This document shows positions 11,259 to 51,800 of a stretch of 64,000 nt of DNA, piece by piece (position 1 is the first letter of the stretch; the number at the start of each line of letters is the position of its first letter). Made by a program: the position numbers and the translations under genes. The DNA is taken from contig OZ286472.1 in the NCBI GenBank assembly GCA_965644265.1, positions 51,336,001 to 51,400,000 of the forward strand, given 5' to 3'. Source of the stretch: Glycera tridactyla. Its lineage: Eukaryota. The notes beneath the pieces are model-generated. The model was given only the letters and a program-made list of their open reading frames with translations. It did not search any database and was not told where the DNA came from.

Positions 11259-13940
11259 GGGTCATTCCATGGTATTCCGGACATGCACTTTCATTTTTCA
11301 AACTTAGTAGTCAGCTGAAATTTTTATTCCAAATCATTGTCAACAGGTTCAAGTGTCGGGGAACAACTTTGTTTTGGTCAGAATTTGGAGACTTTGGTAA
11401 ATATAGCGGTTTTGGGGTAAAAAGTCACCTTTTTGAGCGTTGCGGACGGACAAATTTCATATTGCCATAACTTTGAATTGCAAAATCATACAAGTCTCAA
11501 ATTTGATAACAGACATCCTTCACCTATGTTATCTATGAAAACTATTGTTTTGGTCCAGATTTTTGGAAATTTTTGAAAAAAAAAATCAATTTTTTGAAAA
11601 AATAATGTCCGTCTGCAACACTCAACCTTCAAAAGTTCACTTTTTTTGAAGAAATTTCAAATTGTTTTTTTCAAGACTTCAGTTCCTCTTGAAAAATGCA
11701 GAGATGATGGTAGGTGGCGAGTTATGAATGAATATCTCTGCAACTTTTTTTTTTATTAAGATTTCAAAAAGTGTCCGTCCGCAACGCTCAAAAAGTGTCC
11801 GTCTGCAACGCCCTAAAAGCATCTATCAGCAACACTCAGTGTTTGGTAAAAAAATCTACCAATAAAAGTTTAGCTCATTTTGGATATCACTTGCATTATA
11901 CATTATACTTACATTATAAAGGTTATTGATTATTCCACCCCTTGACCCTTTCATGCTCAGGTGATCCCCAAAATTTCATCGAAAAATGTGTCTTTCAATC
12001 ACAACTTGCAACCTTGGATCTGATCATATGGTCTGACTTGGGGAATATGCCGAGCAAATTTGGCATGGAGAATAACCCACTTAATTTATTGGTTGAAAAC
12101 AATATGAATACTGTTGCAATGAAGGAAGGATCGAGTGCACTCACCATGTGTTTTAATGTCTCACCCCCCCCCCCCCCACCACTCATCCACCACACCTTGC
12201 TGAGCAAGCTAGCTGGGAGGGTGGAGTGAGTGATGAGGAGGTGACCTGCACTGAGCAGTGTGACCATGTTCACCCTATCCATATACAGTAGTTGCTCACC
12301 AAGTTGTGAGCAGATCTGGCCTAGTTGCAAGCAGAGAGCAGATCTAGGGTGGGTCCATAGGTAGATAGAGCAATCCCCCCCCCCCCCCCCTCCCTCCCTC
12401 ACAGTCAGAAGGGTGGGTGAGCAAGTGGGGAGGGGATGCATCAGGCACACTAATACCTCCAGATCATCACTAACAAAGAGTCATCTGAACCATACACTTG
12501 TTCTATTGAAGAAAAACTCACTTCGTGTGAATGAAACTAAAAATTGGATATTTTCATGATTTTGAGAAAAATTGGTGAAAAAGGTGAAATTTGATAAAAA
12601 TAGGAGAAAAATGACAGAATGATTTCATAGAAATATCAATATGCTCCTCATCTGTAATTAATATACTTAATATAAGAAGATATACACATGTATTTCCAGG
12701 GTATGGTAAATTGTTTTAGTACACCTCACATAACAAGGACAAATGTGTCCATCCACAGCGGTCAAGTGTCTGTCCGCAACGCACCATTTTTCCATGTTTT
12801 TTCCCTGATTTTTGAGAGCTCCTGTGAAAATCTCTTCATATGTTCCAGACATGGACTGAAGATGCTCATTAGGCCCAGTTACTGAATAATTGTCCATAAA
12901 CGGAGCAAAAAAAGTCAAACTTAGGTGACTGGAAATTGATATTTTCCTGTTTTGGGAGAGAAAAAATCGTAAAATGGCTAAAATTGAGTGAAAAGGGCGG
13001 AAAATGACAAAAAATAAAACCCACAAATACTTAGATACTCCTTAACTTTAAGCAAAATAGTACAGAAAGATATTTGAATGCTTCTCCAGGATGTGGGAAA
13101 CTATTTTGGTACACCTCATGTAACGAACAGAAGTGTCCGTCCCCAACAGTCAAAAGTGTCTGTCCGCAACGCAACATTTTTTCAGATTTTTTTTTGTTTT
13201 TTCGAAGCTCTAGTAAAAATCTCCATCCATATGTTTCAGTCATGGATTGAAGTTGCTTATTATACCAAATTACTGAATTATTGTCCATAAACAGAGCCAA
13301 AAATGTCTGACTAAGTGACTGGAAATTGACATTTTCATGATTTGGGAGAGAAAAAATTGTCAAAGGGCTAAAATTTAGTGAAAAAGGGTGAAAAATGATA
13401 AAATAATCATCCACAAATACTTAAATACTTGTTATCTTTGATTAAAATAGTAAAGGAAGATATTTGAATGTTTTACCAGGATATGAGGAACAATTTTAAA
13501 CACCTCATATAGCATGGACAAAAGTGTCCGTCCGCAACGGTCAAAAGTGTCTGTCCGCAACGCAACATTTTTTCAGATTTTTCTGAATTTTCTGAACCTT
13601 TGGTCAAAATCACTTTTCATATGCTCTAGGTATATACTCAAGATACTTATCAAGCCCAGTTACTAAATATTTGTCTGTAAACAGAGCAGAATTTTTTGAC
13701 TTTGTGACTGTACCTCAAAACCCTTGTCCCGAAAGTGTCCGTCCGCAACGGTCGGAAAAATGCCTCCACAACCAACATGTGAGAGTTAATGATGATAAAA
13801 ATGCCTGTGATATGTTGAGTCTTGTATGTATAATGAATTGGCATAGGAAAAGTTTTGGTTTGGTGATATGTTTTATCAAGAGATCAGAATTATGTCGGCA
13901 AAGTGTCCGTCCGCAACGGAAAAATACCATGGAATGACCC
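11259..13940. mobile_element. 2.7-kb non-autonomous TIR DNA element with ~390-bp internal tandem repeats
   Basis: Perfect 18-bp TIR gggtcattccatggtatt / aataccatggaatgaccc; units recur at ~12691, 13081, 13471; ~11 copies of tgtc(c/t)gtc(c/t)gcaac; TSD unclear so superfamily unassigned. Confidence 0.8.
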
Positions 13941-44121: not shown

Positions 44122-44742
44122 TATTTGTGAAAGAAACGACTCTCAACACCAAAATTCAATTTCTGCTGTTTTAATAACAAAATAAGTAATCCCCCGGACT
44201 GCGACACCGGCTGTGGAGTCACAGGGAATCACCTAGTCTAACGAATACATGAATTCCCTAACCACCAAACAATAGATCTTCACTGAATGACCTTGACCTT
44301 GCTCACACCGGACATGTCACCAATTCCGCTATCAAGGTCACGGGACCCACGACCTTGACCAAGGTCATAGGTCAAGGTCACTCAGCAAATCATCTTCCCA
44401 TAGGGAACAACTCTGTGTCAATACTGAAATCATCATCAAAGATAACATTTAACAGCTTATACCAGACTCCTGTATCTCTTCAAGCATCTCTCTATCTACT
44501 AAACCTCTGCTCTCCAACTGCTGCCCATCTGACCACCTTCGTCAGAGGCCACCGTTGACGGCAGCCAACTCAGGAACAATGTGAACTGTTTAACATGAAC
44601 TGTAATGGTTTCCATGGCAACAATAAGACTTGACCTATATATAGCAGATAGACAAGACTCGATCAATCATAACACTGAGAAACAAATCTCATAATACCAA
44701 AATATATAGCATGTGGTGCCTAATTGTACACAATAGCGGCAA
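44122..44742 (-). repeat. Split direct repeat B2 (621 bp, element 3' end)
   Basis: Matches 45043-45663 at constant offset 921; no mismatches seen. Confidence 0.95.
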
Positions 44743-44782
44743 CCCCCTTTCATCTAAGACCGGAGGATGGGGAGGGAGGCGG

Positions 44783-45051
44783 AACTTTTTGTCAGGAGAA
44801 AACACACACACCACCAGCAGCACGCTAGGTGTAATATGGCGGAACGGCGCAGCACGCGCATGTGACGTCACAACGCTCCTGAAGAGCGTCCCGTAGGTGC
44901 GCCCGTCTGCTAGCGTCCTTTTCCAAATCATAGTGACTTACAAGATTCTCCTCCAAATTGCCTCATTTCCGCTTAGCCTCAACCCCACCCAGGTCTTCTT
45001 CTCATTCTCTCACAAATCCCAATCGCTGTCGCTGGATTGGGTTATTTGTGA
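44783..45051 (-). repeat. Split direct repeat A2 (269 bp)
   Basis: Matches 51200-51468 at constant offset 6417; no mismatches seen. Confidence 0.95.
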
Positions 45052-45663
45052 AAGAAACGACTCTCAACACCAAAATTCAATTTCTGCTGTTTTAATAACA
45101 AAATAAGTAATCCCCCGGACTGCGACACCGGCTGTGGAGTCACAGGGAATCACCTAGTCTAACGAATACATGAATTCCCTAACCACCAAACAATAGATCT
45201 TCACTGAATGACCTTGACCTTGCTCACACCGGACATGTCACCAATTCCGCTATCAAGGTCACGGGACCCACGACCTTGACCAAGGTCATAGGTCAAGGTC
45301 ACTCAGCAAATCATCTTCCCATAGGGAACAACTCTGTGTCAATACTGAAATCATCATCAAAGATAACATTTAACAGCTTATACCAGACTCCTGTATCTCT
45401 TCAAGCATCTCTCTATCTACTAAACCTCTGCTCTCCAACTGCTGCCCATCTGACCACCTTCGTCAGAGGCCACCGTTGACGGCAGCCAACTCAGGAACAA
45501 TGTGAACTGTTTAACATGAACTGTAATGGTTTCCATGGCAACAATAAGACTTGACCTATATATAGCAGATAGACAAGACTCGATCAATCATAACACTGAG
45601 AAACAAATCTCATAATACCAAAATATATAGCATGTGGTGCCTAATTGTACACAATAGCGGCAA
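45043..45663 (-). repeat. Split direct repeat B1 (621 bp)
   Basis: Matches 44122-44742; overlaps A2 by the 9-mer tatttgtga (45043-45051). Confidence 0.95.
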
Positions 45664-45722
45664 AAGACTGCACAGTCGCACCACTGCCTCACAACCAACC
45701 TCTCTTCCCCCCCCCCCCCCTT

Positions 45723-46692
45723 TTACATAGCAACCACACCATTCCTAATATATCTTTGAAACGCCCCGGACTTCCACCTTCCTTTCCTCTGGATATTCAC
45801 CACGGTCTCCCCCTCTTCGGCCCAATCGGTACACCTCCCAATCCTGAAGGAGTGAGTGTTGAAACACTTGGGGTCTAACCCACATCTCAAACAGGCCTGC
45901 TTGAGCATATACGCCACTCTAGGACGTGAAACAGGGAGACCACCCCCGTCCGTGAAGAGGTACCCAGGGGATGTCCCTCGAAAACCCAGGTAATGTGACA
46001 TGGCTCTAACAGGGCAAACCTCAATGAGACCTGGTGTAGTCTGAGGACATAATCTGAATTCGTACACTTCCTGAGGGTTGGAATTCGTTTTGAATGACGA
46101 AAAATGTACTTGGTAACCAATAACCGCCCTACCTTGGAGAAGGGACCCTACATTTTCCGCCCTTAAAGCATGGTCGGCAGAGCTAGAAGGGGCAATTTCA
46201 GATATACGTAGACAACCATGATAGGCCCAAGAGTACAACGCAGCCCACATGGCCCTGCCCCTTTCAGTCCCCACCAGCCCAGGAATGGCCCCCATAAGCA
46301 GCCTCAAGATGCTCCTTGTGATAGGCTTCCTATGGTCCCTTCTCTCTTCCAATCTATGAGCTCCTACCAACAACTTCCGAATCCTATAGTCTGCCGGGGG
46401 GGTCCCCCATGCCCCTAATTTTGAACCCATGAGACAAGGCAGTAGCCTGCGATCTCAGCGTGCTTGCCGCATACCCCACTTCCACCAGGGAAGCTAAATA
46501 CATAGCTACAAGTTCAGCCCAAGTACCATGTGCAACTTCAGATCCCAATGTCATACGGAATTTGTGGAAAGCTGACCACGTCCTATCATACATGGCGGCC
46601 GTGGACCCCGCGAAGGCTCTCGACTGCAAAATTCCTACCAGCTCGCTCAATCTGTTGGAATCAGGTCCGAGGGGATTGTCATGGGGCACCAT
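45723..46692 (-). CDS. Tyrosine recombinase (~322 aa if restored); one-base frameshift at C7 run 46396-46402
   Basis: N-part ...AFAGSTAAMYDRTWSAFHKF...STLRSQATALSH...GMGDPP; C-part ADYRIRKLLVG...HGCLRISEI...FKT...THSFRIG...GRWKSGAFQRYIR with R, K, HxxR, W, Y catalytic set. Start (MVPHD, 46692) inferred. Confidence 0.92.
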
Positions 46693-48215
46693 TCCAACCC
46701 TGCTGCCCAGAGCTCTGCCCGAGACACCTGAAAGCGTGATAATCTGTCTGCTAAAACATTGAGCACCCCAGGTATGTGTACCGCCCCAATATGAATGTTG
46801 TGCATAAGACAAGTAAGTACCAGTTTCCTCACCAGAGCCATAATCTGCTTGCACTTGGAAGTACGAGTTTGGAGAATTTTTACCACTGCCATGTTGTCCG
46901 AATGAATCAAAAGCGACCTGTGTTTCAGTGTGTCTATAGACGTCTGAACAGCAGTGACCACCGGGTACATCTCCAAGTAAGCAATACTATGACCGGACCA
47001 GGACACCGGGTATTTGAACTGGAACCAACTGTTACCGAGCACCCCGCCAGCCCCAACATGCGATGCATCAGTGTATAAATGTAGGGTCTCTGGGCTAGTG
47101 AGGGATCTCTGGTCAAAGAACGCCTTGCCATTAAAATTAAAGAGAAAATGATGCCAAAGGCGAAGGTCCTCTTTCATGTCCAAAGTAAGCCTAATGAAGT
47201 AAAATGGCTTGTCGACGCCGACTGTTGCGTCAATGAGGCGCCTAATGAACGGCCTGCCCGGCAGCACCACACCAGCTGCCCATTGCAGTTTTCCAATAAG
47301 GGAGGCCATCTCTGACAGTCGGCACGTGGATTTGGATAAGAGGTCCTCAACCAGTCCTGCATACTCTCTCAATTTTGGCACAGGCAAAGTGGCCAGAAAC
47401 TCTGTGGCTGACAATTCAACACCGAGAAACGTAAGAGACCTGGCCGGACCTTCCGTCTTCTCTGAGGACAATGGAACACCCAGCATGGCACACACTTTCT
47501 GAAATACCCTCATGGCATATAAACAATCCTCATATGTGGGCTCAATCAGTATGAAATCATCAAGATAGTGAACAATGCGCACAAGGCCAAACTTTTCTTG
47601 CAAGACCCAGTGTAGGGCCGTGGAGAAGGACTCAAAGATTTTACAAGCTGAGCTGCAGCCCATCGCCAGACAGCGATCTACGAAAAATTGACCACCAAAT
47701 TTGAAGCCCAGCAGATGATAATCGCTGGGGTGAATCGGCACTAGCCGGAATGCTGATTTGATGTCCAGCTTAGCCATGTACGCATTCCTCCCTATTTGCA
47801 AAATCATAGCTATGGCATCCTGCACACTGGCGTATTGCACAGAAGATGCCACAACTGGTATATTGTAATTCACTGCAGTATGGTCATAGGGGTGAGACAG
47901 ATTATGTAGTAATCGGAATTCCCCCGGTGTTTTCTTAGGTCTAATGGCCAGTGGTGACAACTGGAGAGGGGAAACTGGCGGGGAAGCAAACGGCCCCGCT
48001 ATTCTCCCAGCCAGCATGTCTTTCTCAATGAGTTTCCAAGTAGCAGCGGCATTCTGTCTTACGGAGGCTGAGTTAGAACAAGATTCACAAATGACATGAT
48101 CCTCACAGTTAATACTGAAACCATAACGAAAACCATTGACAACATACAACCTCCTCTGCTCATCATAGCCCACCAGCAACCGGTCTAATTCATTTGGAAG
48201 AATAGGAGTGGGCAT
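46647..48215 (-). CDS. pol: Reverse transcriptase + RNase H (522 aa from MPTP; frame open upstream to 48650, overlapping gag)
   Basis: KLDIKSAFRLVP, LAMGCSSACKIFE, HYLDDF (RT); LYTDAS, LEMYPV, HSDN, NVLADRLSR (RNase H). Confidence 0.96.
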   Translation of the reverse strand: MPTPILPNELDRLLVGYDEQRRLYVVNGFRYGFSINCEDHVICESCSNSASVRQNAAATWKLIEKDMLAGRIAGPFASPPVSPLQLSPLAIRPKKTPGEFRLLHNLSHPYDHTAVNYNIPVVASSVQYASVQDAIAMILQIGRNAYMAKLDIKSAFRLVPIHPSDYHLLGFKFGGQFFVDRCLAMGCSSACKIFESFSTALHWVLQEKFGLVRIVHYLDDFILIEPTYEDCLYAMRVFQKVCAMLGVPLSSEKTEGPARSLTFLGVELSATEFLATLPVPKLREYAGLVEDLLSKSTCRLSEMASLIGKLQWAAGVVLPGRPFIRRLIDATVGVDKPFYFIRLTLDMKEDLRLWHHFLFNFNGKAFFDQRSLTSPETLHLYTDASHVGAGGVLGNSWFQFKYPVSWSGHSIAYLEMYPVVTAVQTSIDTLKHRSLLIHSDNMAVVKILQTRTSKCKQIMALVRKLVLTCLMHNIHIGAVHIPGVLNVLADRLSRFQVSRAELWAAGLEWCPMTIPSDLIPTD

Positions 48216-49929
48216 CTGGCCTGGGACGGGAGTCATTAGATTCTCCCCGTGACCCTCCCCCAGAGGCGTTGCCGTTGGAATTGCCCTTGGGCTTCTTACC
48301 ATGTTTACACGTGTAGACCGGGTGCTGGCCATGCCCACATGGGCAGGTGTGTTTGTAGATACAATTGTCAAACTCACATCTTGTCCCCGGGGTGTGGAAG
48401 TCATAGCAGTATCCCTTCCCAACCTCTGGGGTAACACGAGACTTCGACTTGTTAGCGGAAGACTTACGAAATTCATTCGGCTTCTTGGTCTTAGCGCGTG
48501 CCGCCCTGTTGAACAGGTCCTGTCTGAATGTGGCCCAGGAATAGGGCTCCAACTTGTCCGCCACCATGGCAGCCCGGCCAGACCGGAAATGGTAGTCGTA
48601 GTATAAGAAGTTGAGCCCATCATCTGCCATTGACCTAATTTCTGCGGCATAAGCTACCATGTCAACAGTCTCGTGTTGTTTGGACTTATGAGGGTTAGAG
48701 ATATAAATCGACATATAGATATCAAAGGCGTTCGACCAGTCTTTGATTGCAGTAATCTCTTTCTTCTCCCTAGTGAACCCCAGACGACCCTTGGAAGGGT
48801 CCATGGACAGAAAGAATTCGGTATGGTTTTTAGGGTAGAGAAGTTCTACAAACTCGATCAATTTGTCTGCCCAAATTTCTTCTTTCTTTTCCAGAACAAT
48901 ATTGTACCCAATGGGCATACCCCCCGTGATAACCCTCCCGGGGGCGATCTGGTTGTCCTCGTCATGGATGGAGGCATTGAGCAAGGGCATAAACAAGGAG
49001 TTCTCTTCGAACTTGGAACTCGGCTTTGGAACATTCTCAGACTGTGTATGAGCAAGAGCCTCCTGTAAGTTAGCTAAAGTGACCCCAGGTTGACCCTTCC
49101 CCACATTCAAACCAGTAATAGGAACAACTTTCTCACCACTTGTTGACGTTGTTGTCTTCGTTGTAGGCATCGACGCCTGTACTTGGGAAACCGCTGGCGT
49201 CTCTGACCTCCCTTGCTGCGCAGATGTATGAACGGGAATATGCTGCCCGGGCAGAGTCGACAATCTTTGCTCAAGCGCCAACACCGTATTCGTCAACGAG
49301 CTGATCTGCATCTGAGTCTGTTGCAGGCACTGAGCCAATGTGTCTAAGTCCTGAGCACCCTTTGCACCGCTTATCACCCCACGATCACTAACGAAGCCTG
49401 TTGCTTGTGAACTTGACTGCAGTGCCATGACAGTAGGCCCAGACTGATCCAACGCAGGCTGCGCCGAACCCGGTCCGGGACCACGGTCAGACATAGAAGA
49501 CACCGATGCTAGCCCTCGCCTGTCAATCTTATATCGAGAATTAAACACGGGAAGCATACGCTCCTGAGATGTCACCTGCACCTTTTCCAATGTCAAATCC
49601 GTCTCCATATGAACGGGCGTGATGCTGTCACCGTGACCTGAAGTGCACGCGGCTATCTCCACATCTGTGGTAGGAGCAGTGGGCACCTGCGTCAGCGGAT
49701 ACTCCGCCTCCGGCTCACCCCCCTCCTCCAGCGACTCGTTGGGTGTGAATGTTGTTGTTCCGTCAACCCCGTCACACTCCGTCACACTGGCAGAGTCACT
49801 CTGACCCGTGCCATCATTCTGCAACAACTGGGCCATTTCTGCATATTCTTTCGCCTTGCGACTCTGCGTGATACGACGTTTCGGGCGCGCCCCAGCCGGG
49901 TCCTCGCCCTCGCGTTTCTGACCAACCAT
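48190..49929 (-). CDS. gag: Gag-like ORF (579 aa) with C-terminal Cys/His zinc knuckle
   Basis: WSNAFDIY, YYDYHFR, CYDFHTPGTRCEFDNCIYKHTCPCGHGQHPVYTC typical of DIRS/Ngaro ORF1; uninterrupted. Confidence 0.9.
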   Translation of the reverse strand: MVGQKREGEDPAGARPKRRITQSRKAKEYAEMAQLLQNDGTGQSDSASVTECDGVDGTTTFTPNESLEEGGEPEAEYPLTQVPTAPTTDVEIAACTSGHGDSITPVHMETDLTLEKVQVTSQERMLPVFNSRYKIDRRGLASVSSMSDRGPGPGSAQPALDQSGPTVMALQSSSQATGFVSDRGVISGAKGAQDLDTLAQCLQQTQMQISSLTNTVLALEQRLSTLPGQHIPVHTSAQQGRSETPAVSQVQASMPTTKTTTSTSGEKVVPITGLNVGKGQPGVTLANLQEALAHTQSENVPKPSSKFEENSLFMPLLNASIHDEDNQIAPGRVITGGMPIGYNIVLEKKEEIWADKLIEFVELLYPKNHTEFFLSMDPSKGRLGFTREKKEITAIKDWSNAFDIYMSIYISNPHKSKQHETVDMVAYAAEIRSMADDGLNFLYYDYHFRSGRAAMVADKLEPYSWATFRQDLFNRAARAKTKKPNEFRKSSANKSKSRVTPEVGKGYCYDFHTPGTRCEFDNCIYKHTCPCGHGQHPVYTCKHGKKPKGNSNGNASGGGSRGESNDSRPRPDAHSYSSK

Positions 49930-50032
49930 CTACAAAACACGTGTAAAGTTAACTCAACACCAAGGCACATGACACACCATCATGCGGTGACCGAAATATC
50001 ATGAATCTGAAGAAACATGCGGGAAAACTCAC
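49930..50032 (-). other. Candidate 103-nt spliceosomal intron immediately 5' of the gag ATG
   Basis: caaa|GTGAGT ... gttaac (branch-like) tttacacgtgttttgTAG|ATGG. Confidence 0.6.
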
Positions 50033-50099
50033 TTTGCCCTGTAATCAAGCCTCCGAGTTCTGCACCGTGCGTGCGATCAGGATGCGGTTCGCCTCCAAC

Positions 50100-50260
50100 T
50101 TTCGTCTGCGCCGCGGCCCACGTGCGTGAGCCTCACTCTCGGCTGCCACGTGCGAACTGCACCCGGCCTGTCCGGCCATTGGTCACTCTATCACACGTGA
50201 TCACCATGCTGTAATTGTTAACGTCACAGTGCCAGCCGGCACAGCCAATCAGCGCGCAAG
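50100..50260 (-). promoter_or_regulatory. Candidate internal Pol II promoter upstream of gag
   Basis: CACGTG E-boxes at 50119, 50147, 50194; CCAAT boxes at 50178-50182 and 50243-50252 (agccaatcag); CpG-rich. Confidence 0.45.
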
Positions 50261-50373
50261 TCTCAATTGTTCCTAGGGGGGGGGGTGGGGCAATCAGGCC
50301 CCGGAATAACACAACACCGGCGCCCAAACAACGAGCGCGCGAAAACCAACACCAGCAGAAACTGAGCAAGGCA

Positions 50374-51183
50374 TTAAATTCCTCCGCATGCCTCATCACG
50401 TAAACGGTTGTATGCGGCATAAAACGCCTCTGTCCTGGCTAATTGAGGCACACTCGCAATTATTGCTGCACGCAACTCTCGTTGGTACTTCACGAAATAA
50501 TAGTCGTCGGGAAGGGGCACGCCTGTAGCTGTAGACCCCGGGTGCACGGAGTCCCCGGCATACTCCTCCACCTCCAACTTTTGGCCTCCTTTCCCATTCA
50601 TAAATCCTCGAACGTTGTAGAAGGAGACCCCTTCTTCGTATTGACACCCCGTCAGCACCGCCTCATTAAAGACCTGCATTCGGTCCTCGAACACGTCAGC
50701 CGCCAGTTTAGCCTTAAGAGATCGGTCCCCTCGCCTAATGCACGATAGCAGTGTGACTTGCCCAACCTTGGTGATGTCACGAACATGTCTCGCCATACCC
50801 AACAGGCTATCCGCCACATCCGCAGCATCAGCAAATTCACGTGAAATGTCATTCGTACCGATGTGAATGCATACAAGATCCGGTCTCCCCTGCCTGAGAG
50901 ATTCCAAAGCTGAAAGAGATTCTTTGCAGAGAACGGTAGGCGCGAACAGAAACTTGACAGACTCACATAGACGGTCCAAATTCAAGTAAGATGCGTACAA
51001 CTCTCCCTTGTCCATCCTACCCGATTGCAGGGCTCGACGATGTCCATCTCTGCGAGCCCTCCGCCAGAGCTCCCCCTCTAGCCGCCGCGGGAACGAGTGG
51101 CCAAGCACCACCACTTTGGCCTTCCTATTAAGCGGGACTCCAACTCCTCGCAAATCCCTGGCCTTCTTCCTACCACGAGGCAT
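50374..51183 (-). CDS. SGNH/GDSL hydrolase (esterase)-like ORF, 269 aa from MPRGRKK (in-frame ATG further up at 51348 inside A1)
   Basis: Block I VVVLGHSF, block III HIGTND, block V GDSVHP: putative Ser/Asp/His triad intact; uninterrupted. Confidence 0.85.
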   Translation of the reverse strand: MPRGRKKARDLRGVGVPLNRKAKVVVLGHSFPRRLEGELWRRARRDGHRRALQSGRMDKGELYASYLNLDRLCESVKFLFAPTVLCKESLSALESLRQGRPDLVCIHIGTNDISREFADAADVADSLLGMARHVRDITKVGQVTLLSCIRRGDRSLKAKLAADVFEDRMQVFNEAVLTGCQYEEGVSFYNVRGFMNGKGGQKLEVEEYAGDSVHPGSTATGVPLPDDYYFVKYQRELRAAIIASVPQLARTEAFYAAYNRLRDEACGGI

Positions 51184-51199
51184 CCCCACCGCAAGAGGA

Positions 51200-51468
51200 A
51201 ACTTTTTGTCAGGAGAAAACACACACACCACCAGCAGCACGCTAGGTGTAATATGGCGGAACGGCGCAGCACGCGCATGTGACGTCACAACGCTCCTGAA
51301 GAGCGTCCCGTAGGTGCGCCCGTCTGCTAGCGTCCTTTTCCAAATCATAGTGACTTACAAGATTCTCCTCCAAATTGCCTCATTTCCGCTTAGCCTCAAC
51401 CCCACCCAGGTCTTCTTCTCATTCTCTCACAAATCCCAATCGCTGTCGCTGGATTGGGTTATTTGTGA
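51200..51468 (-). repeat. Split direct repeat A1 (269 bp, element 5' end)
   Basis: Matches A2; contains terminal hairpin, TGTGACGTCACA palindrome (51278-51289, CRE-like) and AATATGGCGG (YY1-like, 51250-51259). Confidence 0.95.
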
Positions 51469-51521
51469 GGGCCAGACACACAGAATCCGGGACTGTCAAA
51501 ATACTGAAGTGAGATCCTCAC

Positions 51522-51693
51522 CTGATATACTTGTGTCTGCGAGGTCGCATTTTGCTGCAACTTTCGGGTACTCCTTCAGTTTTCTCTGCGCTAGGTTAAT
51601 CTCCCCTGTATATTGCGCCTCATCGAATAGTTTTTCTAATGTCCGTGATAAAGAGGTTGGGCTGAGACCGCCAGCACCAAATGCGGTCGCCAT
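51522..51693 (-). CDS. LRCH: Leucine-rich repeat and calponin homology domain protein, coding exon 1
   Basis: caaaATGG start; MATAFGAGGLSPTSLSRTLEKLFDEAQYTGEINLAQRKLKEYPKVAAKCDLADTSIS then G|GTGAGG phase-1 donor; resembles the LRCH N-terminus (LERALEEA...LNLSARKLKEFP...DLSDT) and its exon boundary before DLSxN. Confidence 0.85.
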
Positions 51694-51699
51694 TTTGAA

Positions 51700-51800
51700 A
51701 ACTGACTTCACTCCATCACGGAGAAATGACGCATGCGCGCTGACCTAGATTCCGCGCTCGGGAAATGACATCATTGGCAAGAAAGTAGGGCGTCCTAGAC
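51700..51800 (-). promoter_or_regulatory. LRCH proximal promoter/5' UTR
   Basis: CpG-rich; CGCATGCGC NRF1-like motif at 51730-51738. Confidence 0.4.

What the first reader, a model, noticed from the sequence alone, without database searches (positions are those of the whole stretch)
44122..51468. Ngaro-type YR retrotransposon with the SGNH hydrolase 5' of gag: a possible circularly permuted architecture
Seen: order A1-SGNH-gag-RT/RH-YR-B1-A2-B2, with the hydrolase catalytic motifs (GHS, GTND, DSVH) intact. From recalled knowledge: in described fish and amphibian Ngaro elements the hydrolase ORF follows YR at the 3' end. Inference: on the circular intermediate the cyclic order gag-pol-YR-SGNH is unchanged, and only the B/A recombination junction sits on the other side of the hydrolase. 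This could be a lineage created by relocation of the junction. The promoter-like spacer and intron ahead of gag would then be the ancestral 5' end.
Basis: partly seen in the sequence, partly recalled or inferred. Interest (0 to 1): 0.85.

Follow-up and report, generated by a model that had tools for sequence, protein, structure and literature searches.

The report
Ngaro retrotransposon with esterase gene first
This is a young copy of a tyrosine-recombinase (Ngaro-type) jumping gene whose lipase-like esterase gene sits in front of the capsid gene instead of behind the recombinase; the layout is real and standard for a large, old group of such elements in this animal and in marine invertebrates, so it is a modest variant of a known kind, and its proposed origin by circular permutation could not be tested.

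Summary
On the minus strand, 51468..44122 reads A1-SGNH-gag-RT/RH-YR-B1-A2-B2. A1=A2 (269 nt) and B1=B2 (621 nt) are 100% identical, and the GHS/GTND/DSVH motifs are intact.

The layout is not a one-off:
- At least 12 copies from two subfamilies in this 2.04-Gb genome share it.
- 33 of 33 SGNH/YR coordinate pairs from more distant lineages have SGNH 3.8-7.1 kb upstream of YR.
- So do elements in the scallop Argopecten irradians and in marine-sample assemblies.

SGNH is under strong purifying selection (dN/dS 0.05-0.07), folds as an SGNH hydrolase (pLDDT 91; Z 16.9 to PAF-AH Ib and sialate O-acetylesterases), and diverges in step with RT and YR.

A conserved promoter-like cluster and a short leader intron ending exactly at the gag ATG occur in all 10 copies compared. 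No RNA run was listed.

The circular-permutation origin is untested. No 3'-hydrolase Ngaro sequence was reachable, and the SGNH-gag spacer shows no remnant of the B/A junction.

No searchable paper describes a hydrolase-first Ngaro; Repbase and Dfam could not be checked. The scan has found this layout before on other DNA of the same genome. In this copy the recombinase gene is frame-shifted.

Verdict: new variant of a known kind, moderate interest.

The parts
51200..51468 (-). A1, the 5' split direct repeat (269 nt). It holds a conserved CCAAT (51457-51453) / ATTGG (51440-51436) pair and a GTGACGTCAC box (51288-51279), read here as a putative promoter P1.
   Evidence: 100% identical to A2; the motifs are conserved in 9 copies of two subfamilies.
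51460..51468 (-). 9-nt core TCACAAATA at the 5' end. It is also found at the B1/A2 junction (45043-45051) and at the 3' end (44122-44130).
   Evidence: The overlap between the ends and the junction ranges from 0 to 9 nt or more among the copies, so it marks the crossover zone and is not a fixed duplication.
50374..51183 (-). SGNH/GDSL hydrolase gene (269 aa from MPRGRKK, stop included). It is the first ORF, and its ATG lies 17 nt after the end of A1.
   Evidence: Pfam Lipase_GDSL_2 E 1.1e-8. AlphaFold2 model pLDDT 91. Foldseek 1wab E 7e-7 and VIA-align Z 16.9. GHS, GTND and DSVH are conserved. dN/dS is 0.05-0.07.
50033..50373 (-). SGNH-gag spacer. It holds a promoter-like cluster (ATTGG, TGTGACGT, CACGTG, GACCAATGGCCG, GCACGTGG), the invariant GCAGACG (50109-50103), and a 77-nt ATG-free putative leader exon (50109-50033).
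   Evidence: The motifs are conserved in all 10 copies compared, in which gag is only 52-74% identical to the window's; there is no ATG in any putative exon 1. No RNA evidence.
49930..50032 (-). Putative 103-nt leader intron: donor AAA|GTGAGT, acceptor TTTTGTAG| directly before the gag ATG.
   Evidence: Donor and acceptor are present in 10 of 10 copies. The intron holds 0-5 ATGs against none in the exon. This is inferred, not shown by RNA.
48190..49929 (-). gag-like ORF (579 aa) with a CCCH-like zinc-finger motif near its C-terminus.
   Evidence: There is no Pfam hit. It is homologous to the gag ORFs of the other copies and of L043, L047, L051 and L055.
46647..48650 (-). RT/RNase H ORF (667 aa). 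It overlaps gag by 461 nt in another frame and has no methyltransferase domain.
   Evidence: RVT_1 E 1e-14 and RT_RNaseH E 1.3e-3. 1011 homologues at E<=1e-10, the best at 49% identity.
45723..46854 (-). Tyrosine recombinase gene, split in this copy into two frames (46854-46384 and 46430-45723). The break lies in a G5-A-C7 run at 46396-46408.
   Evidence: The other copies and the outside relatives have one ORF of 305-373 aa. The relative L041 scores Phage_integrase 33.5 bits, above the cut-off.
45043..45663 (-). B1, the internal copy of repeat B (621 nt). It starts 59 nt after the YR stop.
   Evidence: 100% identical to B2.
44783..45051 (-). A2, the internal copy of repeat A. It overlaps B1 by the 9-nt core.
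   Evidence: 100% identical to A1.
44743..44782 (-). Unique 40-nt A2-B2 spacer with the C-rich motif CCGCCTCCCTCCCC.
   Evidence: The motif is conserved in both subfamilies and in the Argopecten element L042. Its function is unknown.
44122..44742 (-). B2, the 3' terminal repeat (621 nt). An ATTAAA at 44175-44170 lies 53 nt before the element's end and is a putative poly(A) signal.

Best explanation
The region is one recently inserted copy of a Ngaro-like tyrosine-recombinase retrotransposon. All four genes are present, but the recombinase is frame-shifted. The copy belongs to a large, old clade whose normal layout is A1-SGNH-gag-RT/RH-YR-B1-A2-B2.

Shown here:
- the repeats and the ORF order;
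- the hydrolase as a conserved, selected, resident gene of the element;
- the same layout in many diverged lineages of this genome and in other animals.

Inferred working:
1. A promoter in A (a CCAAT pair plus a TGACGTCA box) starts the full-length RNA inside A1. An ATTAAA in B ends it about 20-30 nt before the end of B2.
2. As in the published Ngaro model, the missing ends are restored from the internal B1/A2 junction.
3. The recombinase inserts the circular product by crossing over in the TTTCACAAATAA zone of the B/A junction.
4. The esterase is translated from this RNA as the first ORF.
5. gag-pol is made from a second, internal promoter in the SGNH-gag spacer. Its ATG-free 61-79-nt leader is spliced over a 103-147-nt intron directly onto the gag ATG.

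The enzyme is predicted to be a Ser-His-Asp esterase acting on a small acyl (acetyl-type) ester of a lipid or sugar. Its substrate and its role in transposition are unknown.
For: Structure. Copies: 12 full or near-full copies from two subfamilies share the order. In 11 of them the split repeats were found at 97-100% identity, and where both flanks were read they differ between copies. Wider lineages in this genome: more than 1638 SGNH and more than 2361 YR candidate loci, and in 33 of 33 pairs matched by coordinate SGNH lies 3.8-7.1 kb upstream of YR on the same strand. Outside this genome: L041 and L042 (Argopecten irradians) have the full A1-SGNH-gag-RT-YR-B1-A2-B2 structure, L043 has A1...A2, and L048, L055, L057 and L058 have the same ORF order. 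Selection: SGNH dN/dS is 0.05-0.07, like RT at 0.08 and lower than gag at 0.13-0.29; 70-74% amino-acid identity is kept where synonymous sites are saturated. Co-divergence with RT and YR: r=0.74 over 30 pairs not both from this genome; L041, L043 and L048 group together in both the RT and the SGNH tree, though no branch of the SGNH tree is well supported. Fold. Internal promoter and intron: conserved in 10 of 10 copies. ATTAAA in B.
Against: No RNA run was listed, so both promoters, the intron and the transcript ends are predictions. The YR of this copy is frame-shifted, so this copy could move only with a recombinase supplied by another copy, unless the shift is a homopolymer error of the assembly. 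Distant relatives (L055, L058) have only 48-87 nt between SGNH and gag, which leaves no room for an internal promoter, so the expression scheme is not universal in the clade. The GTAAGT in A1 (51359) that could place SGNH inside a long intron is not conserved in the other copies. The Pfam match of YR in this family is below the curated cut-off.
Confidence: 0.8

Rival explanations
1. Circular permutation. One ancestral Ngaro element acquired the hydrolase once. The classical (YR-SGNH-B/A-gag) and the present (YR-B/A-SGNH-gag) layouts then differ only in which side of the hydrolase the recombination junction and its terminal redundancy lie on the circle. The gag-proximal promoter and intron would be the former 5' end. 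The direction of the change is open.
For: The cyclic order is identical, since published amphibian elements have the hydrolase after YR. The B/A unit here fills the YR-to-SGNH interval almost exactly: 59 nt after the YR stop and 17 nt before the SGNH ATG. A complete promoter-like module with a leader intron sits directly before gag, as expected of a former 5' end. Cyclic assemblies from marine metagenomes (L049-L054) read gag-RT-YR-SGNH-gag. The nearest ESM Atlas cluster by features is a chordate group named after PAF acetylhydrolase. SGNH-first is old: SGNH-less relatives nest inside it.
Against: The spacer has no detectable similarity to A or B (best 21.4 bits; 19 of 100 shuffles do as well). 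Cyclic-order identity is nearly forced, because the YR-to-gag interval is the only free intergenic space. No 3'-hydrolase element turned up among the 9 outside elements (L041, L042, L043/44, L048, L049-54, L055/56, L057, L058) or the 33 in-genome pairs. All the outside contexts have the hydrolase directly ahead of gag, and L049-54 is a cyclic assembly whose repeats suggest the same layout. So a shared origin of the two hydrolases is untested. An internal promoter is also what a leading ORF would select for.
Confidence: 0.35
2. Independent capture. This clade acquired an esterase gene at its 5' end separately from the vertebrate Ngaro elements, for example from a host PAF-AH-like gene or from a LINE ORF1 esterase.
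For: Retroelements have taken up SGNH esterases more than once (LINE ORF1 esterase, PDB 4c1b, PMC3905857 listed). The A1 profile matches PAF-AH (E 4e-3) and the LINE esterase (E 7e-3) about equally weakly. A single-sequence search of 1.84 billion representatives gave only 75 hits, and every one whose context could be read lay directly ahead of gag.
Against: There is no close host or LINE donor: the best solved-structure matches are 13-18% identical. The gene has co-diverged with RT and YR over a depth where RT is only 42-48% identical, so any capture was ancient. Two Ngaro lineages recruiting the same enzyme class independently is less parsimonious.
Confidence: 0.3
3. Artefact of parsing. The hydrolase really belongs to the 3' end of an upstream tandem or partial copy, or the boundaries are misplaced.
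For: Tandem and multimeric repeat units do occur (L031 carries extra B-A units), and metagenome assemblies walk through the repeats cyclically.
Against: In 10 genomic copies, homology to the window begins at A1 and ends at B2, with different flanks on each side, and B2 is followed by host DNA and not by a second SGNH. In the window, A1 is preceded after 53 nt by a host exon.
Confidence: 0.03

Closest known systems
Ngaro-like YR retrotransposons of vertebrates with a hydrolase ORF (DrNgaro; Xenopus DIRS-53_XT and DIRS-54_XT; Goodwin and Poulter 2004 as cited in PMC9210276)
   Same: Split direct repeats A1...B1-A2-B2. The genes gag, RT/RH without a methyltransferase, and YR. An extra SGNH-type hydrolase ORF. 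The same cyclic gene order.
   Different: There the hydrolase ORF follows YR at the 3' end and all ORFs overlap. Here it is the first ORF, 17 nt after A1, and is separated from gag by a 445-nt promoter-like spacer with a putative intron. Sequence relatedness of the two hydrolases was not tested.
Hydrolase-free Ngaro elements (sea urchin, fungi, Cafeteria; PMC4157794, PMC8547959)
   Same: The repeat structure and the gag-RT/RH-YR core. The RT relatives L046 (Pinctada) and L047 (Procambarus) have no SGNH either.
   Different: They have no esterase gene. In the RT tree the two SGNH-less relatives nest among SGNH-first elements, which suggests loss.
Esterase domain of CR1/L2-type LINE ORF1 proteins (ZfL2-1, PDB 4c1b, PMC3905857)
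   Same: An SGNH esterase encoded at the 5' side of a retroelement, ahead of the RT.
   Different: There it is a domain of ORF1p in a non-LTR element. The sequence match is only marginal (E 7e-3), and 4c1b is not among the 50 best structural matches.
PAF acetylhydrolase Ib catalytic subunits and bacterial sialate O-acetylesterases (PDB 1wab, 3dt6, 7pzg, 6njc)
   Same: The best structural matches: Z 16.7-16.9, rmsd about 3 A over about 177 residues, with the same catalytic blocks.
   Different: 13-18% identity. The nucleophile motif is GHS, not GDS, throughout this family. These are cellular enzymes, not element-borne ones.

Membership tests
Ngaro-like YR retrotransposons (order DIRS) | Split direct repeats: A1 at the 5' end and B1-A2-B2 at the 3' end, with A1=A2 and B1=B2 | tested here: met
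   269-nt and 621-nt pairs, both 100% identical, in that order.
Ngaro-like YR retrotransposons (order DIRS) | Encodes a tyrosine recombinase and not an rve integrase | tested here: met
   Phage_integrase E 5.6e-4, below Pfam's cut-off. HSFR...GRW...RY motifs are visible. The homologous YR of relative L041 scores 33.5 bits, above the cut-off. The gene is frame-shifted in this copy.
Ngaro-like YR retrotransposons (order DIRS) | RT/RNase H without the methyltransferase domain of DIRS and PAT elements | tested here: met
   RVT_1 and RT_RNaseH only. The ORF ends 63 residues after the RNase H match.
Ngaro-like YR retrotransposons (order DIRS) | The RT/RH groups with the Ngaro reference sequences in a phylogeny | not testable with these tools
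   No reference Ngaro sequences (Repbase) could be obtained. The relatives found are unnamed or 'uncharacterized protein'.
Hydrolase-bearing Ngaro as described (fish, amphibians) | The hydrolase ORF lies downstream of YR | tested here: not met
   SGNH is the first ORF, upstream of gag. The published position is after YR.
SGNH/GDSL hydrolase superfamily | Conserved blocks I (GxS nucleophile), III (GxND) and V (DxxH), and the flavodoxin-like SGNH fold | tested here: met
   GHS 30-32, GTND 111-114 and DSVH 213-216 of the 271-residue query that starts at 51189, which begins two residues before the ATG. Pfam PF13472 scores 36.3 bits against a cut-off of 32.9. Model pLDDT 91 and Z 16.9 to solved SGNH enzymes. 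Activity was not assayed.

The most novel reading that the evidence does not exclude
The hydrolase-first and hydrolase-last Ngaro layouts are circular permutations of one ancestral element. The attachment junction and its terminal redundancy moved from one side of the esterase gene to the other, and the conserved gag-proximal promoter and intron are the relic of the former 5' end. That would make this the first documented case of a retrotransposon lineage evolving by relocation of its recombination site on the circular intermediate.
Probability: 0.35. Interest if true: 0.55.

Novelty: new variant of a known kind. Interest (0 to 1): 0.4.

Why it matters
The published picture of Ngaro elements places the optional hydrolase behind the recombinase and is drawn from fish and frogs. 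These data show that a much larger and older group has the esterase as the leading, strongly selected gene. That group has thousands of candidate loci in this genome, and members in a scallop and in marine-sample assemblies. The result corrects the textbook diagram for annotators. It gives a large natural set of sequences for asking what an esterase does for a retroelement, which is still unanswered for LINE esterases too. It also raises a testable question about how elements that pass through a circular form rearrange. It is not a new kind of element.

Tried and rejected
- The word-indexed protein search with the SGNH protein found nothing. With the 40-sequence profile it found only 6 hits, none named.
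- The metagenome-contig scan returned a single, already known 1.5-kb contig.
- Three look-ups of cluster members gave almost no names and mostly short contigs.
- Single-sequence structure prediction failed (pLDDT 34). The alignment-based model was used instead.
- No RNA run was listed for the element.
- Goodwin and Poulter 2004 and Poulter and Butler 2015 are not held. No supplement of the Xenopus paper is held.
The wider lineages were therefore judged from hit coordinates only, matched by eye.
- The idea that SGNH lies in a long intron starting at the GTAAGT in A1 (51359) was set aside for this family, because that donor is absent from the other copies.
- A remnant of the B/A junction in the SGNH-gag spacer was sought and not found.
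Full report
**What is there.**

The finding's coordinates are exact. The element is on the minus strand, from 51468 down to 44122.

The repeat finder and direct extension give two pairs of perfect direct repeats:
- 51200-51468 equals 44783-45051 (269 nt).
- 45043-45663 equals 44122-44742 (621 nt).

Read in sense, this is A1, internal region, B1, A2, a 40-nt unique spacer, then B2. B1 and A2 overlap by 9 nt (TCACAAATA), and the same 9 nt form both outer ends.

The ORFs in order are:
- a 269-aa SGNH protein: ATG 51183, 17 nt after A1, stop at 50374;
- gag, 49929-48190;
- RT/RH, 48650-46647, overlapping gag in another frame;
- the tyrosine recombinase, 46854-45723, ending 59 nt before B1.

Pfam gives Lipase_GDSL_2 (E 1.1e-8, above the curated cut-off), RVT_1 (E 1e-14), RT_RNaseH (weak) and Phage_integrase (E 5.6e-4, below the cut-off). 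It finds no methyltransferase.

GHS, GTND and DSVH are present. They are the nearly invariant columns of a 40-sequence alignment of relatives.

The recombinase gene of this copy is split between two frames at a G5-A-C7 run (46396-46408). Six other copies and four outside relatives have a single ORF of 305-373 aa.

**It is a family architecture, not a one-off.**

A DNA search of the window's own 2.04-Gb assembly found full-length relatives at 78-85% identity and a second subfamily at 67-70% identity.
- In 12 loci examined, tblastn gives the same order: SGNH, gag, RT/RH, YR.
- Self-comparison finds the A1...B1-A2-B2 repeats at 97-100% identity in 11 of them.
- The flanks differ from copy to copy, so these are independent insertions.

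I therefore matched the two coordinate lists by eye:
- 33 pairs lie within 8 kb of each other on the same strand.
- In all 33, SGNH lies 3.8-7.1 kb upstream of YR.
- None has SGNH just downstream of YR.

**Outside this genome.**

The RT/RH has 1011 homologues at E<=1e-10. The best is 49% identical, and the few named ones come from Argopecten, Pinctada and Procambarus.

Contexts fetched for RT hits and for SGNH hits agree:
- L041 (an ENA assembly) and L042 (Argopecten irradians) have the complete A1-SGNH-gag-RT-YR-B1-A2-B2 structure.
- L043 has SGNH-gag-RT-YR, with an A-like repeat before SGNH and after YR.
- L048, L055, L057 and L058 have the same gene order.
- The Tara-type contigs L049-L054 assemble cyclically as gag-RT-YR-SGNH-gag. 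A 70-nt repeat in L052 suggests that the B/A unit lies between YR and SGNH.
- L046 (Pinctada) and L047 (Procambarus) have no SGNH (hmmsearch). In the RT tree they nest, with 100/100 and 100/99 support, beside SGNH-first elements, which suggests loss.

Not one 3'-hydrolase element was met.

**The hydrolase is a resident, selected gene.**
- Against L002-L004, its dN/dS is 0.05-0.07. This is as low as RT (0.08) and lower than gag (0.13-0.29).
- Between subfamilies, synonymous sites are saturated, yet 70-74% of residues are kept.
- Across seven lineages, SGNH identity tracks RT and YR identity (r=0.74 for the 30 pairs not both from this genome).
- L041, L043 and L048 group together in both the RT and the SGNH tree, though no branch of the SGNH tree is well supported.
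- With the alignment, AlphaFold2 gives pLDDT 91.
- Foldseek's best match is PAF acetylhydrolase Ib (1wab, E 7e-7).
- VIA-align gives Z 16.7-16.9 to PAF-AH Ib and to bacterial sialate O-acetylesterases.
- By sequence profile, the solved relatives are all distant: a bacterial GDSL protein at 9e-6, PAF-AH at 4e-3, and the LINE ORF1 esterase 4c1b at 7e-3. There is therefore no sign of a recent host or LINE donor.

**How it probably works (inferred).**

The alignment of A from nine copies shows a conserved CCAAT...ATTGG pair at its start and an invariant GTGACGTCAC box about 100 nt before its end. A short ATG-poor stretch and the SGNH ATG follow. B has an ATTAAA 53 nt before its end.

A transcript from inside A1 to inside B2 fits the published Ngaro model, in which the internal B1/A2 junction restores the ends (PMC6681497). 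The esterase would be its first ORF.

In all 10 copies compared, the SGNH-gag spacer holds:
- a cluster of ATTGG, TGTGACGT, CACGTG, GACCAATGGCCG and GCACGTGG;
- an invariant GCAGACG;
- 61-79 nt without any ATG;
- a consensus donor (GTGAGT or GTAAGA);
- 103-147 nt holding 0-5 ATGs;
- TTGYAG directly before the gag ATG.

I read this as an internal promoter with a spliced leader that makes gag-pol RNA. No RNA run was listed, so this is unproven.

Distant relatives keep an acceptor-like YAG at the gag ATG. Some of them have only 48-87 nt of spacer, so their scheme must differ. The GTAAGT in the window's A1 is not conserved in the other copies.

The ends of the copies overlap the junction sequence TTTCACAAATAA by 0 to 9 nt or more. 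This fits a recombinase crossover zone better than a fixed target duplication.

**The permutation idea.**

The literature held here confirms that the described hydrolase lies after YR (PMC9210276). It holds no description of a hydrolase-first Ngaro.

The cyclic order is indeed unchanged, and the B/A unit here fills the YR-to-SGNH interval almost exactly. But that interval is the only free intergenic space on the circle, so the agreement carries little weight.

The spacer has no similarity to A or B beyond chance: 19 of 100 shuffles reach the observed score. No vertebrate Ngaro hydrolase could be obtained for a tree.

The only hint of kinship is weak. The nearest ESM Atlas cluster by features is a chordate group auto-named after PAF acetylhydrolase.

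I therefore leave the origin open:
- permutation of a single acquisition, about 0.35;
- independent ancient capture, about 0.30;
- the rest undecided.

**Relation to earlier notes of this scan.**

The same layout was noted at least eight times on other DNA of this genome. Follow-ups (s1-320738, s1-345368) judged it a real but modest variant, and my own tests agree.

The notes on my own window were each checked, at least in part:
- s1-356637, the 9-bp core;
- s1-356640, the promoter and intron at gag;
- s1-356647, the host intron.

**Safety.**

Noticed in passing
window 46396-46408 (minus strand): The recombinase gene of this otherwise perfect copy (repeats 100% identical) is split between two frames at a G5-A-C7 homopolymer run. 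All other copies have one ORF. It may be a real early mutation, a copy moved by a recombinase supplied by another copy, or an assembly error.
   Followed up: partly
window 50374-51183 versus 45723-49929; L002, L003, L004: Synonymous distances are mosaic. The window's SGNH is nearer to L003/L004 (dS 0.6) than to L002 (1.06), while gag, RT and YR are nearer to L002 (0.55-0.94) than to L003/L004 (1.2-2.4). This suggests recombination between subfamilies near the SGNH/gag boundary.
   Followed up: partly
window 44743-44782; also L002-L005, L033-L037, L042:12284-12344: The unique A2-B2 spacer carries a C-rich motif (CCGCCTCCCTCCCC-like). The motif is conserved in both subfamilies and in the scallop element. 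It has no assigned role and may be a priming or recombinase-binding site.
   Followed up: no
L041:5069-5083 and 11614-11628: The ENA element L041 is flanked on both sides by the same 15 bp (TTCTCTACCTGATAA). This is unexpected for a recombinase-inserted element, which should make no target duplication.
   Followed up: no
L031:7762-10000: One copy carries extra B-A units after B2 (a 1371-nt self-match with a period of 868 nt), that is, a multimeric repeat tail.
   Followed up: no
L002:7550-7850: A tandem duplication of about 147 nt of the promoter-like cluster lies in the SGNH-gag spacer of one copy.
   Followed up: no
window 51469-51711 (minus strand): The element begins 53 nt after a GTGAGG donor that ends an ORF resembling the first exon of an LRCH-type leucine-rich-repeat gene (MKSVFKMATAFGAGG...). 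It therefore sits in sense orientation at the start of that gene's first intron.
   Followed up: partly
G000 genome-wide: More than 1638 SGNH and more than 2361 YR candidate loci were found. Nearly all of the 150 scored in each search are free of stop codons, which points to a very large and recently active radiation of these elements in this genome.
   Followed up: partly
L046:1010-5655: Upstream of the SGNH-less Pinctada element, two 255-nt perfect direct repeats flank two long ORFs (592 and 693 aa). This is probably a separate LTR-type element and it was not characterised.
   Followed up: no
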